Origin: Fonticula alba ATCC 38817
Taxonomy: Eukaryota > Protista > Nucleariida
Strand: one strand, 5' to 3'
Length of the DNA: 64,000 bases
NCBI GenBank assembly: GCA_000388065.2
Contig: KB932207.1
The notes under the pieces: model-generated
What the model was told of the DNA's origin: nothing
Seen by the model: only the letters and a program-made list of their open reading frames with translations
The model's database searches: none
Position numbers and translations under genes: made by a program
In this document: piece by piece, positions 29,492-34,437 of the stretch
How the letters are laid out: every line of letters starts with the position of its first letter
Position numbering within the stretch: the first letter of the stretch is position 1

Positions 29492-29829
29492 GCTTGGCGC
29501 GCGTGTGCGAGCTCTCAGCCGGCCTTCTCGTGGGAATGGGCCACAGCGATCGGACGGGGCAAGGAAAGGGGGGGGGGGGGGGGGGGAGGGCCCGGGGGCG
29601 GCGGCAGACAGAGGAGGCAAAAGGCAGGATGAGGGCCAGTGTGTGAGAGAACGACCGCGGGTGTGTCCTGCGGATGCGGAGCCCCAGAAAAACGCCGCNN
29701 NNNNNNNNCCCCCCCCCCCCCCCCCGTCCATCCCCTTCCTGGCGATCGGCGGGGGGCGGAGCGACAGGCGACTCATGTCCCCGGCTGCTTCGTGGGGGGC
29801 AGGGCGCGTTGGCAGTTGGAGCTTGTGGG

Positions 29830-32800
29830 TTATGTACGATCGGGGGCGTCGGCCGGCCCCTCGGTCTCTTGGGGCTGGAGCTGGAGCTGGAGAATTTCCC
29901 GGGCAATGGCGGCCACCCGGGTCTGGTCGACAATGGTGTCCTGGTAGATCTTGTACAGCCAAGTCGGGTCGGAGCAGCAGATGTGCGGCGGGACCGCGGT
30001 GGCCTGCTCGATGTTGCGCTGCTCGGCCGGCGGCAAGTGCACGATGCCGCCCTTCAATGGCGCACGCTTGGGGTGGGGAACGGAAGCCCGTCGATCGGAA
30101 TTCTATTGGGCGAAGAGCGTCCATGCATCGGGGCGTTGTAGCGGGCGGGCGGGCGGGCGGGCGGGAATCCAGGCGCAGGAGAGGTAAGGCTGGCGTGGAG
30201 GCAGGGCGGGGAGGCGATACTGGCGGAGGTGGAGGTCTCTCTCGCTCTCTCTCTTCCCCTCTCTCGGAGGAGCATGGTGCCTGGTCCGGGACAGGGGTCA
30301 GCGAGAAGGCCACATGGCCACGTACCGCCCATGCGCGATAGATGCACCCGGCAATGCGGCACTCATGCATGTAGGGGGTGTAATTTTCCGGCTGCACCCC
30401 AAAGGGAAAGAGCTCAATGACGCCGCCGGGGGTGGTGGGCAGCCGCGGCCCGCGAGGGTGCTGAACCGGGCTGGCTGCCATGCTGGCCGCCTCCAGGAGC
30501 AAATGGTCCCGCAGGGTGGCCTCTACCAGCCAGCCGCCGGGCTGGTGCTCCTGCTCGTGGGAAGCGGCCGAGGGGGCCTGGGCCAGGGCTGCCAGGGCCA
30601 GGGCCGCCCCATGCATGGCTACTATGATGCGTGCTCCGGCCAGGCGAGTCATGAAGCTCTTCAACGAGGACACATTGAAGAAGGGCACATTCTCCAGGCG
30701 GAGGACCGCCACGCAGAGGCCCGTCTCGCGGGCAAGTTCCTCTGCATCAAGCCGAACGGGGGTTAGCAAGACTGGGGGATGGTGCTCGGCTGGATGGAGA
30801 CGCGGGAGCCCCCGGCAAGGGGGCCGCCAAAGGCAGGGGCCCTCGTGCGCCTCCGCTTGCGAAGAGCTAGTCCCCCGTACCGGTCAGCTGGATCTCGTTC
30901 AGGATGCGCCGATCGCGCGACCGGCCCAGGATGAGAATCTCCCCGACGCCGGTGCTCGGGACCGAGCTGCCCGCGACTTCCGGACAGAAGGCCGCCGAGG
31001 GGGCCCCCATGTCCAGGCTGGACGCCGGGCCGGATGGCAGGTGGTGCCCCGGGAAGCGCCGGCCAGCCAGGCCGAGGCGCAGGTTCAGGAGTTTCATCAG
31101 GGAGGTCACCTGCGGGCCGGCGACGTTCTTGTGCGGCAGCGGACCCTGGGGCGAGTTGAAGCCATAGTGATACCAAGTTCCCTTGCGGGATAGGCCCATG
31201 GATGCCTCCTGCGGCGTGGCGGCCGGGCGAGAGGTGAGCAAGCGAGCCGGGCCACAGGGGAGGGGGATGGGTTTGCGACGACGCCACCGGGTCCGCGGGC
31301 GAGGGCGAGGCAGAGGGGGGGAGGGGGGGGGGGAGCGAGGCATGCGTGGCGCACTTCAAAGCGGATGAGCGACCCCCGGGGGAAGTCGACGAAGCTCATG
31401 ACCTTGCGATCGGAAAACAGCTGCAGCAAGGGAAGGTAGTCCCCTGCGGCATGGTCATCGAAGAGGATGATGCTGGTGGCCAAGCGGGCGACGCGTCATG
31501 TTAGGGGGTTGGCGGGGGGGGGGGGGAAAGAAAAGGCACGGCAACAGTCCGGGCCAGCAAGCACAAGCCACGGTAACCTACTTGTGGTCAAACGGGAGGC
31601 TCCGATGGAGTTCATCCGCCACATCTGGATGCAGGCCTCGGCCGGGCCCTGGGGCTTCCTGCACCCGGCGCAGGTCCCGGTCGACGGTGTGCGAGAGGCC
31701 CGCCTGTTCGGCCGGCGTGCGTCCATGGCGGGGCTGCCAGGCGTCCATGGTGTGCAGGAGCCCGAGCAGGTCATCATGAATGGTGTGCATCAAGTTGTAT
31801 GGCAAGAAGCGCGCCAGCAAGTAGCTCCGGCCGCGAATGATCTGACAAGGGGCTTATGGGTCAATTCAAGATATTGAAGGACGTATGCATGTATGCATAT
31901 GTGTTTGAGTATGTATCTGTGTGTGGATGTGCGTGCATGTGCGTGCATGTGTGTGCATGTGTGTGTGCGTGGCACGGTCGGGCGCCAAGGCCCCTGGTGT
32001 ACCCGGTTCTCCAGCTGCGTGTACTTCGGATACTTGCGAATGTTGCCATGGTCCATGATCTTCAGGTCCACCTTGTAGGCATTCGACACGGTGCTGAACT
32101 GAACAATCGATTGGAACTCGCCGCGGGTCGTGTCATCCAGGCCCCGCACAACGGACCGACCCTGGGACAGCAGCAGCACAAAGGTCCCCTGGTCGACATT
32201 GAAGTAGAGGTTCCGAATGAGGCAGAGCCTGGGGACATGCGCGGGGCCAGCACAGGCAGGGCCCCGGGGGAGGAGGGCCCAAGAGACCGGGAGACGAGGA
32301 ATGACGGCGTGGCAGGCATTGGTCGGTCAGCATTGGGTCCCTGGCGAAAGGCTCGCCATCATTGCGCCGGGGGTCACATACCGGGTCCCATCGCGCTCGC
32401 GCATGCAGTCAATGTCCGATGGCAGGAAGCGCTCGACATCGCTCCCGGCATCGACTCGAACCTGCGGCAGGACCGCCCCGAAGGCGGCATTCCCTTGGAG
32501 CATGGCCTGCGAGGAGACCGGTTCCGGGGCCGCGGCCGGGCCCACGGCATAGACACTGTTGGCCAGGGGCCCGCCACAGGCAACCCCCGGAAGGAAGGGG
32601 CACTCCACCGAGCATAGCCCGGGCTCATGGGCCGAGTAATGCCGGTAGCGGGGGTGTCGCGCGCCGGCATCCTCGTCGGCTGGCGACCCGCACCAGCACT
32701 CGGTGCCATTTTGCAAGCCGGCCCAGGCGAAGCCCTGGTCCCGGCAGTAGCCCAAGCACTGGACCGGATCCACCGGTGGCTTCAAGTGCCCGGTGCCGGC

Positions 32801-33581
32801 CGGGTCCACCAGGGTCGGCAGGGCGCGCCCGATCCGGCCATTGACCCGGTCGGCGAAGCACCCAAGGAAGGCGTCCTCCAGCCCGGGGATCGCTGGCCGC
32901 AGGGGCTCGGTCCTGGGAGGGTGCATGAGTCAGTCTGCGGCGGGACGGTCCCCGACGGCCCGAGCCGCCAGGGCCCGGGCAGCATTCCCCGGCCGCCGGT
33001 GGTCCTGCAATGGAGGATGACGCAGGGGGGGGTGAAAAGAAAGGGCCCATTCAATCTCTTAATGTGTGCATTCTCCCCCTTCGCCCCCTCCCCCCACGCC
33101 GTGGCCCGAACAAACCTGTCCTCGCCGACGGCCAGCTGCCAGACTGGCGAGTGCTCATCAAAGTGTCGGAAGAGCCAGCGGCTTCGAAGGGCCTGCATAT
33201 CGAGGGCCATGCCCTGGCCAGGGTCCGTGCCGGTCGACTGCGCAGTTGCCCCAGCGCGGTGGGGCTGGCGTTGCAGCACCTGCCGGATGAGGGATCCGCC
33301 CTCGGGTCGGCTGGAGCCGGTGGCTGGCGACCGCTGGGCTGGTTGGCCGGCTGGTCGGCCACCCAGGAGGGTTAAGTAGCCAAGGGTCCCGAGGGCGAGC
33401 TTTTCCAGCCGGAAGGACGGGGCAGACAGAGCGCCGAGCAGGATGCCAAACGGGCGGCCGTGGGAGCGTTTGGGTCAAAACCCGTGAACCAGCATGCGGG
33501 AATGCCGAAGTGCCACCGGGGCGCAAGTCCACGTACAAGCCCCATCAGGGTGACTATCCGTCGAGTGGAAAAGCGAGCCAT
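29830..33581 (-). CDS. POMGNT2: Type II membrane WSC-domain + GT61 glycosyltransferase, POMGNT2 (GTDC2)-like
   Basis: Signal anchor MARFSTRRIVTLMGL-LALGTLGYLTLLGG; WSC (GCFAD..CLGYCRDQGFAWAGLQNGTECWCG..CSVEC..CGGPLANSVY); GT61 motifs LARFLPYNLMHTIHDDLLGL, GLSRKGTWYHYGFNSPQGP, RDRRILNE, AMHGAAL, VIELFPFGVQPENYTPY, GGIVHLPPAEQ, PPHICCSDPTWLYKIYQDTIVD. Confidence 0.88.
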
Positions 33582-34437
33582 GCGACGACTACACCGGGGC
33601 AGGGGAGAGAGGCCGTGAAGGGGCCCCCCGCCGATGCTCGGCCGATCGGCGCGTGTCGACCAGTAGCCCATATGGAAAAGATCGGGCAGCGAACGGGGAG
33701 GCACTCCCGTCGGACAAATGTCCGGGCGCAGAGTGTGTAGCTACGCACGAGGCCCGGGCTCAGATCGGCCGGCTACAGGCAGCGTGATATGACGCTGGGG
33801 AAAAGGAAAGTCAAGCGAGCAAGATCAAGAGAGCCGGTGAAGCGAGGGTAGAGGCAGCGGAGGAGGCGGGAGAAAGCAGGCGAGGCAGATGAAAAAGGAC
33901 GGGCGCCGGGGCTTCATGTCAGGGGGGGGGGGATGCCTTTCCGCGGGGCGCATCCTAAAATAAAATAAAAAACACCCCCCCCGCCATGGCCAATCGTTGT
34001 GGGCTAAGATGCGATCTGATGTTCCAGAACTCGCATCGTCGTATCGCATTCCTCCCCATCAGTTGGCGGCTAGCGTGGATTTCGGAACATCCGGTGCCAA
34101 GGTGCGTGGTGTCCTTGTGCACAGCGGGCGGGGGGGGGGGGGGCGGTCCGATTGGCCCGCGCCCCAGGGGTCGGGGGAGTGTTTCGGACTCCTCTTCCTT
34201 GCACCCCCGCTGCCCGGGGTGCCTTTTTTTTTTTTGGCCTTGCTCCCTCCTCTGCCAGGCGGGCGCCGGGCCTTTCCGAGGAGTCGAGTGCGCCCCCAGC
34301 GGCCAATGGGCGGTCTTGGCCCGTGGGTCATTCCTCTCCCATCCCCTGTGTCCCCTCCTTCGCCCTCTGTCCCTGCCGCTCCTCCCCCCCCCCCCCCCCC
34401 CCGCGCCGCCCTTCCCGTCTGTCTTGCTGCGAGGACC

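What the first reader, a model, noticed from the sequence alone, without database searches (positions are those of the whole stretch)
29830..33581. POMGNT2-like O-mannose GlcNAc-transferase with an N-terminal WSC domain and no fibronectin-III tail, in an apparently non-animal genome
Seen: spliced exons give signal anchor, then WSC, then a GT61 domain with long motif-level matches to animal POMGNT2 (NLMH..HDDLL, GLS.K.TWY.YGF..PQGP, ELFP..V.P..YTPY, CC.DP.WL..IYQDT.VD). The stop comes about 25 aa after YQDT, so there is no FN3. Established: animal POMGNT2 builds the core-M3 glycan on alpha-dystroglycan and uses a C-terminal FN3 domain; WSC domains are carbohydrate-binding modules of fungal wall sensors and some animal Golgi enzymes. 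Inference: a pre-metazoan O-Man/GlcNAc-extension pathway acting on other surface proteins, with WSC replacing FN3 for substrate targeting.
Basis: partly seen in the sequence, partly recalled or inferred. Interest (0 to 1): 0.8.

Follow-up and report, generated by a model that had tools for sequence, protein, structure and literature searches.

The report
Fungus-side POMGNT2 enzyme with WSC domain
The amoeba Fonticula alba, a relative of fungi, has a real gene for a sugar-adding enzyme of the family that in animals starts the muscular-dystrophy-related sugar chain on dystroglycan, but it has lost the animal enzyme's protein-gripping tail and carries a sugar-binding WSC module at the front instead, a layout shared only with a few early fungi.

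Summary
The window comes from Fonticula alba. The gene is H696_04551: minus strand, nine exons, 856 aa, and all eight introns are GT..AG. It encodes a type II signal anchor, a WSC domain and a GT61 catalytic domain.

- **Family:** the catalytic domain is POMGNT2-type. It is not EOGT-type or plant-type.
- **Residues:** every invariant donor-binding and catalytic residue is present, as is the POMGNT2 C-lobe insertion (CC...WLYKIYQDT).
- **FnIII tail:** it is truly absent.
- **Fusion:** it does not depend on a splice. One exon holds both the WSC domain and the first conserved GT61 element.
- **Relatives:** the same WSC-GT61, FnIII-less layout occurs in the blastoclad fungi Sorochytrium and Paraphysoderma and in an intronless environmental ORF. 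On the GT61 columns alone these group with Fonticula (97/98 support).
- **Ancestral state:** aphelid, filasterean and most other family members, chytrids included, keep an FnIII-length tail. FnIII therefore looks ancestral, and the WSC form looks like a derived Holomycota variant.
- **Acceptor contacts:** the clade has also replaced His125, which contacts the acceptor peptide in the bovine enzyme.

"Pre-metazoan POMGNT2" was already known from choanoflagellates. I found no description of the fungal-side spread or of the WSC variant. Activity, substrate and expression are untested, and my single RNA-read call failed.

The parts
29830..33671 (-). Whole coding region of H696_04551 (856 aa, nine exons: 33671-33537, 33399-33116, 32912-32382, 32228-32003, 31841-31582, 31472-31355, 31208-30881, 30741-30326, 30102-29833; stop 29830-29832)
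   Evidence: Exact mapping of P0001 onto the window. All eight introns are GT..AG and 109-223 nt long. GC by codon position is 0.69/0.50/0.82, a coding-like pattern that the introns lack.
33358..33557 (-). Type II signal anchor (aa 39-59, IVTLMGLLALGTLGYLTLLGG), split by intron 1 and preceded by the Arg-rich stretch RRMARFSTRR
   Evidence: Highest Kyte-Doolittle window in the protein (mean 2.0 at aa 39-57).
32546..32872 (-). WSC domain (aa 154-262), eight cysteines: C158, C192, C196, C212, C214, C240, C244, C252
   Evidence: Pfam PF01822, E 6e-10, above the curated cut-off. It is 34-40% identical to the WSC domains of the three relatives, and all eight Cys are invariant. The model has pLDDT 72 and matches Kremen (E 5e-5) and yeast Wsc1 (TM 0.66-0.69).
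32382..32419 (-). First conserved element of the GT61 N-lobe (aa 305-317, SDIDCMRERDGTR), lying in the same exon and open frame as the WSC domain
   Evidence: It aligns to the family consensus ssv.C.g.....r.C.f.nl and to the intronless ORF P0058. The uninterrupted ORF 32327-32926 appears.
29866..32419 (-). POMGNT2-type GT61 (GT-B) catalytic domain, aa 305-845, exons 3-9
   Evidence: phmmer against PDB finds POMGNT2 only, E 2.5e-35. The model matches POMGNT2 structures at E 1e-37 with TM 0.70. Against Swiss-Prot models, POMGNT2 scores 1e-38 to 1e-40, plant GT61 1e-14 to 1e-17 and EOGT 1e-12 to 1e-13.
31773..31796 (-). NxxHxxxD motif (N408, H411, D415, matching bovine N163, H166, D170): UDP beta-phosphate contact, proposed catalytic base and mannose contact
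   Evidence: Alignment to 7e9j. The columns are invariant in 116/116 family members. Residue roles come from PMC8360118.
30897..30923 (-). RxxxRxxxN motif (R614, R618, N622, where R614 and R618 match bovine R294 and R298): UDP phosphate binding
   Evidence: The R294A and R298A mutants are inactive in the bovine enzyme.
29935..29979 (-). CCSDPTWLYKIYQDT (C808, C809 and Y819, matching bovine C436, C437 and Y447), part of the C-lobe insertion typical of POMGNT2
   Evidence: This is the strongest aligned block to POMGNT2 (81 bits). CC is invariant in 116/116. The insertion (bovine 395-451) is described as conserved among POMGNT2 orthologues. The match of the family profile to EOGT stops before this region.
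31584..31730 (-). Fonticula-specific insertion 1 (aa 430-478) at the 3' end of exon 5. It is modelled with low confidence, and an alternative upstream donor cannot be excluded.
   Evidence: GC by codon position is 0.90/0.51/0.73.
30428..30574 (-). Fonticula-specific insertion 2 (aa 684-732) between the HGA motif and VIELFP. It is probably a disordered loop.
   Evidence: No GT..AG pair could remove it. GC by codon position is coding-like, 0.80/0.57/0.88. pLDDT is below 50.
29699..29708 (.). 10-N assembly gap 122 nt downstream of the stop codon. It is a caveat for the claim that no FnIII exon follows.
   Evidence: No FnIII-like coding sequence was found elsewhere in the window, and the three relatives also end 17-28 aa after YQDT.

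Best explanation
This is one real gene for a type II membrane glycosyltransferase of the secretory pathway. Its order is cytosolic tail, signal anchor, low-complexity stem, WSC domain (a cysteine-knotted carbohydrate-binding module), linker, then a GT-B catalytic domain of the POMGNT2 branch of family GT61. Shown here: the architecture, the clade membership, and the retention of every invariant donor-binding and catalytic residue (N408, H411, D415, R614, R618, H671, C808, C809; E644 and Y819 are also kept). Also shown: the absence of FnIII and the replacement of acceptor-peptide contacts (bovine H125/T127/N160 are A367/K369/L405 here). Inferred: it is an inverting UDP-sugar transferase, most likely using UDP-GlcNAc. 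H411 would deprotonate a hydroxyl of a protein-linked mannose that Pmt2/Pmt4-type O-mannosyltransferases added earlier. The mannose-contacting residues (H411, C808) are kept, but the elements that read the peptide around the mannose in animals are gone. Acceptor choice is therefore probably different, and the N-terminal WSC lectin-like module probably helps by holding the enzyme on glycan-rich substrates. The POMGnT1 stem lectin and the lectin domains of other glycosyltransferases work this way. In evolutionary terms it is a derived Holomycota variant (Fonticula plus Blastocladiomycota) of an enzyme that the opisthokont ancestor already had with an FnIII tail.
For: Gene model. Single gene: the WSC domain and the start of the GT61 N-lobe share one exon and ORF. 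The intronless environmental ORF P0058 has the same order and aligns end to end (E 3e-71). Sorochytrium P0089 has WSC plus GT61. Paraphysoderma has WSC coding sequence about 250 nt upstream of its GT61 on the same strand. POMGNT2 branch: (family profile: POMGNT2 2.8e-198, EOGT 3e-21). Residues: with roles from PMC8360118. No FnIII. Clade: UFBoot 97 / SH-aLRT 98 on columns without the WSC, stable when long branches are added. In the AU test the constrained tree was 26.7 lnL better, p 0.81. FnIII-length tails occur in Paraphelidium, Capsaspora and most other family rows, including the chytrids Entophlyctis and Caulochytrium, and the profile's C-terminus matches FnIII domains. Pmt2/Pmt4 orthologues are reported in F. 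alba (PMC8147084).
Against: There is no biochemical evidence for donor, acceptor or linkage. GT61 enzymes use different donors (UDP-Xyl, UDP-Araf, UDP-GlcNAc). In the bovine enzyme both deletion of FnIII and the H125A mutation abolish activity, so an enzyme lacking both may do something else. The Fonticula branch is very long (2.6 substitutions per site), and it went elsewhere in two earlier trees. The WSC domain was not confidently placed relative to the catalytic domain. A second FnIII-less clade has no WSC, so WSC is not a necessary substitute.
Confidence: 0.6

Rival explanations
1. Same fold and clade, but a different job. The enzyme decorates a polysaccharide or a matrix/wall glycan, for example a mannan-like or glucan-like polymer of the Fonticula stalk matrix or spore wall. 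It does not extend O-mannose on proteins. WSC serves as the polymer-binding module, and the donor may not be UDP-GlcNAc.
For: The peptide-reading elements are lost (FnIII, H125, T127, N160). The atlas lists clusters in which WSC sits with polysaccharide-active or carbohydrate-oxidising enzymes (GH16, glyoxal oxidase) and with a protein xylosyltransferase. GT61 donors and acceptors vary widely, and the plant members act on xylan.
Against: The residues that touch the mannose and the glycosylated residue in the bovine complex (H166, C436, C437, F159, F247) are all kept, as is the whole C-lobe insertion that shapes the acceptor groove. These would be expected to drift if the acceptor had changed class.
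Confidence: 0.28
2. Annotation artefact: the WSC part and the GT61 part are two neighbouring genes wrongly joined.
For: No RNA evidence was obtained. In Paraphysoderma the two parts are annotated as separate genes.
Against: Exon 3 is one open frame that holds the WSC domain and the first conserved GT61 element. An intronless environmental ORF has the same fusion. The GT61 part alone would have no signal anchor. In Paraphysoderma the GT61 homology continues upstream of the annotated start, towards the WSC coding sequence, so there the split is the artefact.
Confidence: 0.03
3. It is a GT61 of another branch (EOGT-like or plant XylT/XAT-like), or a recent transfer or contaminant from an animal.
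For: The Pfam GT61 score for P0001 is below threshold (23 against 27 bits). The top phmmer hits to the GT61 part are animal proteins.
Against: EOGT (9wjk) is in the PDB copy but is not hit by P0001 at E<=1, while POMGNT2 scores 2.5e-35. In the structural ranking POMGNT2 is 20 or more orders of magnitude ahead. The gene has eight canonical GT..AG introns of 109-223 nt, its GC content is like the rest of the window, and it lies on a 2.1-Mb contig. The tree places it among Holomycota.
Confidence: 0.02

Closest known systems
Animal POMGNT2 (AGO61/GTDC2), GT61; structures 7E9J/K/L, 6XFI, 6XI2, 8KB7
   Same: It has the GT-B catalytic domain with NxxHxxxD, RxxxRxxxN and HGA motifs, and the C-lobe insertion with CC...WLxRIYQDT. 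All donor and mannose contacts are conserved. It is a type II membrane protein. Identity is 22-24% over about 550 aligned columns, with TM 0.70.
   Different: It has no C-terminal FnIII domain, which is essential in the bovine enzyme and reads the acceptor peptide in trans across a dimer. H125, T127 and N160 are replaced. It has an added N-terminal WSC domain, a long stem and two lineage-specific insertions.
WSC-GT61 proteins of Blastocladiomycota (Sorochytrium milnesiophthora KAL7750731, auto-named POMGNT2; the Paraphysoderma sedebokerense locus) and the environmental ORF P0058
   Same: They share the same domain order, the same lack of FnIII and the same loss of the H125 histidine. Their WSC domains are 34-40% identical with all eight cysteines kept. 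They form one clade on the GT61 columns.
   Different: They are only 28-31% identical overall. Fonticula has extra insertions and a far longer branch.
FnIII-bearing POMGNT2 homologues of unicellular opisthokonts (Capsaspora 'ago61', Salpingoeca rosetta, Paraphelidium, chytrids such as Entophlyctis and Caulochytrium)
   Same: They share the same catalytic subfamily outside animals.
   Different: They keep an FnIII-length tail and have no WSC. In Paraphelidium, Cladochytrium, Opistho-2, Monosiga and S. rosetta the H125 histidine is also kept, while Capsaspora has Leu there.
POMGnT1 stem domain and other lectin-assisted glycosyltransferases (own knowledge; the POMGnT1 stem is mentioned in PMC8478517)
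   Same: A working analogy: a carbohydrate-binding accessory module beside the catalytic domain of an enzyme that extends O-mannose.
   Different: The fold and family are unrelated (GT13), so the similarity is in function only, and it is untested here.
EOGT and plant GT61 (XAX1, XAT, XYXT, MUCI21, N-glycan beta-1,2-XylT)
   Same: They share family GT61, the fold and the diphosphate-binding residues.
   Different: They are much more distant (11-15% identity, Foldseek 1e-10 to 1e-17). The family profile matches EOGT only over positions 134-389, without the C-lobe insertion.

Membership tests
GT61 / POMGNT2 subfamily | GT-B catalytic fold of GT61 | tested here: met
   The AF2 model has pLDDT above 90 for most of aa 290-845. 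Foldseek matches POMGNT2 crystal structures at E 1e-37 with TM 0.68-0.71.
GT61 / POMGNT2 subfamily | Donor and catalytic motifs NxxHxxxD, RxxxRxxxN and HGA (bovine N163, H166, D170, R294, R298, H345) | tested here: met
   N408, H411, D415, R614, R618 and H671. These columns are invariant in 116/116 family sequences.
GT61 / POMGNT2 subfamily | C-lobe insertion conserved among POMGNT2 orthologues (bovine 395-451) with C436, C437 and Y447 | tested here: met
   HPKRAPLKGGIVHLPPAEQRNIEQATAVPPHICCSDPTWLYKIYQDT aligns at 81 bits. C808, C809 and Y819 are present.
GT61 / POMGNT2 subfamily | Closer to POMGNT2 than to EOGT or plant GT61 | tested here: met
   I made no tree with EOGT or plant outgroups because no such sequences were obtainable, so the family tree is unrooted.
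Canonical (animal-type) POMGNT2 | C-terminal FnIII domain, essential for activity in the bovine enzyme | tested here: not met
   The protein ends 34 aa after YQDT. No FnIII-like coding sequence occurs in the window.
Canonical (animal-type) POMGNT2 | Acceptor TPT-motif contacts H125, T127, F159, N160, F247, C437 | tested here: not met
   F404, F535 and C809 are kept. H125 is A367, T127 is K369 and N160 is L405. The H125 column is His in 103 of 111 sequences.
Canonical (animal-type) POMGNT2 | Transfers GlcNAc in beta-1,4 linkage from UDP-GlcNAc to protein O-mannose | not testable with these tools
   This needs an enzyme assay.
Core-M3 pathway context | The same genome encodes protein O-mannosyltransferases (upstream) and B3GALNT2/POMK (downstream) | not tested
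   Pmt2/Pmt4 orthologues in F. alba are reported in PMC8147084. An earlier scan note reports a divergent POMK-like kinase. I could not search the genome myself.
WSC domain (PF01822) | Profile match above threshold, eight conserved cysteines and the WSC/PAN-like fold | tested here: met
   39.6 bits against a 27.8 cut-off. Eight invariant Cys. The model matches Kremen and yeast Wsc1 WSC domains.
WSC domain (PF01822) | Binds carbohydrate | not testable with these tools
   This needs a glycan array or pull-down.

The most novel reading that the evidence does not exclude
Fonticula and zoosporic fungi retain an ancestral opisthokont pathway that extends protein O-mannose with GlcNAc. Together with the POMK-like kinase noted elsewhere in this genome, it may build a core-M3-like glycan. 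In the Fonticula/blastoclad lineage the enzyme swapped protein-reading (FnIII, His125) for glycan-reading (WSC) substrate selection, aiming it at matrix or wall glycoproteins. Animal dystroglycan glycosylation would then be one surviving specialisation of a much older adhesion or matrix glycan system that Dikarya lost.
Probability: 0.15. Interest if true: 0.75.

Novelty: new variant of a known kind. Interest (0 to 1): 0.5.

Why it matters
The published survey of the dystroglycan glycosylation enzymes that I read traced POMGNT2 only as far back as choanoflagellates (PMC8478517). This gene and its relatives put the family on the fungal side of the opisthokonts as well: Fonticula, aphelids, chytrids and blastoclads. 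The enzyme therefore dates at least to the opisthokont ancestor. From my own knowledge, Dikarya extend O-mannose with more mannose and seem to have lost it, though I did not test that here. The WSC-for-FnIII clade is a natural experiment in how a glycosyltransferase chooses its acceptor. The catalytic and mannose-binding residues are frozen, while both peptide-reading elements are gone and a lectin-like module has appeared. Expressing this enzyme would show whether FnIII is truly indispensable for O-mannose GlcNAc transfer, and what WSC domains recognise when attached to a Golgi or ER enzyme.

Tried and rejected
1. RNA-seq confirmation. Both sequencing-run runs showed no RNA run to hold the stretch. 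There is therefore no transcript evidence.

2. Word-indexed homologue search with P0001. It found almost nothing (1 and 3 hits), which I attribute to the protein's low-complexity words crowding the 8000-candidate limit. The exhaustive phmmer search and a search seeded with Sorochytrium worked.

3. First trees. FastTree with 181 rows and a quick IQ-TREE with 72 rows put Fonticula with the long-branch protein P0149 near animals. I rejected this as a long-branch or search artefact. The constrained WSC clade had a better likelihood, and the careful and enlarged trees recover it.

4. The two Fonticula-specific insertions as unspliced introns. For insertion 2 no GT..AG pair fits, and its codon-position GC is coding-like. 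For insertion 1 an alternative donor cannot be excluded.

5. A hidden FnIII exon downstream. Neither tblastn nor an HMM of 148 family tails found anything.

6. An outgroup-rooted GT61 tree. No EOGT or plant sequences were obtainable as tool objects.

7. Literature on GT61 or POMGNT2 in chytrids or Holomycota, on WSC-GT61, and on AGO61 in Capsaspora. Nothing relevant was found.

8. A genome-wide search for POMT, B3GALNT2, FKTN and LARGE. This was not possible with these tools. The scan notes hold only a POMK-like entry.
Full report
**What is there.** The window is GC-rich eukaryotic DNA. A word-indexed protein search with the long minus-strand ORF returned an identical database protein. This is P0001, "hypothetical protein H696_04551 [Fonticula alba]", also named "WSC domain-containing protein", 856 aa, on a 2.16-Mb contig.

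P0001 maps exactly onto nine minus-strand exons between 33671 and 29833, with the stop codon at 29830-29832. All eight introns begin with GT, end with AG and are 109-223 nt long. The coding sequence shows the GC pattern expected for coding DNA across the three codon positions (0.69/0.50/0.82). The introns do not show it.

**Domains.**
- The strongest hydrophobic window is aa 39-57. It follows an Arg-rich stretch, as in a type II signal anchor.
- Pfam finds WSC above its curated threshold. All eight WSC cysteines are present.
- A model of aa 146-268 (pLDDT 72) matches the WSC domains of Kremen and of yeast Wsc1.
- The rest of the protein, aa ~305-845, is a GT61 catalytic domain.

**Which GT61.** The evidence points to the POMGNT2 branch.
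- Against all PDB sequences, P0001 hits only POMGNT2 (E 2.5e-35) in four collinear blocks. EOGT is in the same library (9wjk) but P0001 does not hit it.
- A profile of 116 family members scores POMGNT2 at 2.8e-198 and EOGT at 3e-21. The EOGT match covers only profile positions 134-389.
- The AlphaFold model of aa 141-856 is confident over the catalytic domain. It matches POMGNT2 crystal structures at E 1e-37 with TM 0.70.
- Against Swiss-Prot models, twelve vertebrate POMGNT2 proteins come first (1e-37 to 1e-40). Plant XAX1, MUCI21, XYXT1 and XAT3 follow (1e-14 to 1e-17), then EOGT (1e-11 to 1e-13).

The first refutation condition, "groups with EOGT or plant enzymes", therefore fails.

**Residues.** I used the bovine structure paper (PMC8360118) and the alignment offsets.
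- Donor and catalytic residues are all kept: N163, H166, D170, R294, R298, E324, H345 and Y447 correspond to N408, H411, D415, R614, R618, E644, H671 and Y819.
- The mannose and Thr contacts H166, C436, C437, F159 and F247 correspond to H411, C808, C809, F404 and F535.
- Eight of these columns (bovine N163, H166, D170, R294, R298, H345, C436 and C437) are invariant in 116 of 116 family sequences.
- The C-lobe insertion (bovine 395-451), which the structure paper describes as conserved among POMGNT2 orthologues, is the best-conserved block of the Fonticula protein.
- Three acceptor-peptide contacts are changed: H125 is A367, T127 is K369 and N160 is L405. The H125 column is His in 103 of 111 sequences.

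**No FnIII.** Most family members carry about 120-150 residues after YQDT, and the family profile's C-terminus matches FnIII domains in the PDB. Fonticula stops 34 residues after YQDT. Neither tblastn with 148 family tails nor an HMM built from them finds anything FnIII-like in the 64-kb window. A 10-N gap lies 122 nt downstream of the stop codon, which is a small caveat.

**One gene or two.** It does not separate the two domains. It splits the first conserved element of the GT61 N-lobe, whose family consensus is ssv.C.g.....r.C.f.nl. The first half, SDIDCMRERDGTR, lies in exon 3, in the same uninterrupted frame as the WSC domain.

Independent support comes from relatives:
- A 2.9-kb metagenome contig carries one continuous 779-aa ORF (P0058) with WSC followed by GT61. 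It aligns with P0001 from the WSC domain to the C-terminus (E 3e-71).
- Sorochytrium milnesiophthora (Blastocladiomycota) has a 754-aa WSC-GT61 protein that NCBI names POMGNT2.
- In Paraphysoderma sedebokerense the annotation splits the locus, but WSC coding sequence lies about 250 nt upstream of the GT61 homology on the same strand.

The second refutation condition, "separate genes", therefore fails on sequence grounds.

**Distribution and history.** An exhaustive phmmer search of 1.84 billion representative proteins gave 437 relatives at E<=1e-3. Named members include:
- animals;
- the choanoflagellates Monosiga, Salpingoeca rosetta and S. punica;
- Capsaspora, annotated "glycosyltransferase ago61";
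- the aphelid Paraphelidium;
- the chytrids Cladochytrium, Entophlyctis and Caulochytrium;
- the two blastoclads.

Only the Fonticula, blastoclad and P0058 proteins have a WSC domain, and all of them lack the FnIII tail.

I built a maximum-likelihood tree (LG+C20 PMSF, 54 sequences) on columns that exclude the WSC domain. It gives (Fonticula,(Sorochytrium,(P0058,Paraphysoderma))) with ultrafast bootstrap 97 and SH-aLRT 98, and a well-supported 26-row set (98/89) also contains this clade. In the quick tree of the same alignment the chytrid and aphelid rows are its nearest neighbours. The WSC clade survives adding two long-branch sequences.

Earlier, quicker trees had paired Fonticula with one of those long branches. 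The AU test showed that the constrained WSC clade actually had the better likelihood. The Fonticula branch is very long, so some caution remains. However, the shared architecture and the shared loss of His125 are independent characters that point the same way.

FnIII-length tails occur on both sides of the tree: in Paraphelidium and most of the rows around the chytrids on one side, and in Capsaspora, S. rosetta and animals on the other. FnIII is therefore most simply ancestral, and the WSC form derived. A second FnIII-less clade has no WSC or any other detectable added domain. Loss of FnIII therefore does not require WSC.

**How it probably works.**
- Shown: the architecture, the clade membership, and the residue conservation and losses.
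- Inferred: an inverting GT-B transferase in the ER or Golgi lumen that binds a UDP-sugar, most likely UDP-GlcNAc. H411 acts as the base on a hydroxyl of protein-linked mannose.
- From the literature: the upstream step is plausible because Pmt2 and Pmt4 orthologues are reported in F. alba (PMC8147084).
- Inferred: acceptor selection must differ from the animal enzyme, because the FnIII domain and His125 that read the dystroglycan peptide in animals are missing. The WSC module is the obvious candidate for holding the enzyme on glycan-rich substrates.
- Main rival: the acceptor is not a glycoprotein at all but a wall or matrix polymer.

I put the main model at about 0.6 and this rival at about 0.28.

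**Comparison with what is known.** POMGNT2 before animals is not new. Bigotti and Brancaccio (PMC8478517) reported the whole enzyme set in choanoflagellates. Capsaspora's copy has long been annotated, and NCBI's pipeline already names the chytrid and blastoclad proteins POMGNT2. WSC domains fused to other carbohydrate-active enzymes are also common.

I could not find, in about 8.4 million searchable papers, any discussion of POMGNT2 or GT61 in Holomycota or of a WSC-GT61 architecture. The third refutation condition, "already widespread and described", is therefore not met. The layout is rare (four instances here) and apparently undescribed. By family rules this is a member of the POMGNT2 sequence subfamily. 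It fails two features of the canonical animal enzyme, so I class it as a new variant of a known kind.

**Context from the scan.** An earlier follow-up on the same contig reports a divergent POMK-like lumenal kinase. Another first-stage note reports a second GT61-like domain fused to a POFUT-like domain. I did not test either. The scan has not reported this WSC-GT61 gene before.

Noticed in passing
L003:4166-6492 (Paraphysoderma sedebokerense JAHLJZ010000041.1): The GenBank annotation splits what looks like one WSC-GT61 gene into a 73-aa 'WSC' gene and a 428-aa GT61 gene whose model starts 8 residues before the NxxH motif. The GT61 homology continues upstream to 4725.
   Followed up: partly
Family members P0086, P0083, P0163, P0159, P0027, P0158, P0161, P0112, P0126: A second, well-supported clade of POMGNT2-like proteins ends 23-32 aa after YQDT, so it has no FnIII. 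Those checked have no WSC or other Pfam domain and keep the His125 histidine. The organisms are unknown (Logan/ENA/JGI).
   Followed up: partly
Family members P0021 (Aplysia), P0039, P0044, P0050, P0055, P0079, P0084, P0087, P0097, P0101, P0132: A clade that includes Aplysia carries a 410-500 aa N-terminal extension before the catalytic domain, with no Pfam match in the one checked (P0021).
   Followed up: no
P0120 (1250 aa), P0147 (1270 aa), P0034 (Salpingoeca punica): Other unusual architectures occur in the family: a C-terminal leucine-rich-repeat region (P0120), an ~800-aa C-terminal extension (P0147) and a weak N-terminal Trypsin_2 match (P0034).
   Followed up: no
window 31842-32002 (intron 4): This intron is CA/CAT-rich and has lower GC (0.52) than its neighbours. 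Its stretch 31927-31974 tripped the read laying filter.
   Followed up: no
window 29800-33700 (sequencing-run index): Four 2025 runs labelled 'organism A' hold 31-69% of the sampled words, and the highest share is close to the exonic fraction (~0.66). They may be transcript-derived. A soil metagenome run and a sediment metagenome run hold 65% and 38%, which suggests Fonticula-like organisms in the environment. None of this was verified.
   Followed up: no
same contig, about 1.06 Mb before the window (scan note s1-065409): An earlier follow-up reports a divergent POMK-like lumenal kinase in F. alba. With this gene and the reported Pmt2/Pmt4, it would make three steps reminiscent of the core-M3 pathway.
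   Followed up: no
window 430-61791 (13 N runs): The window holds 13 assembly gaps (1862 N in all), including one at 29699-29708 just downstream of this gene.
   Followed up: partly
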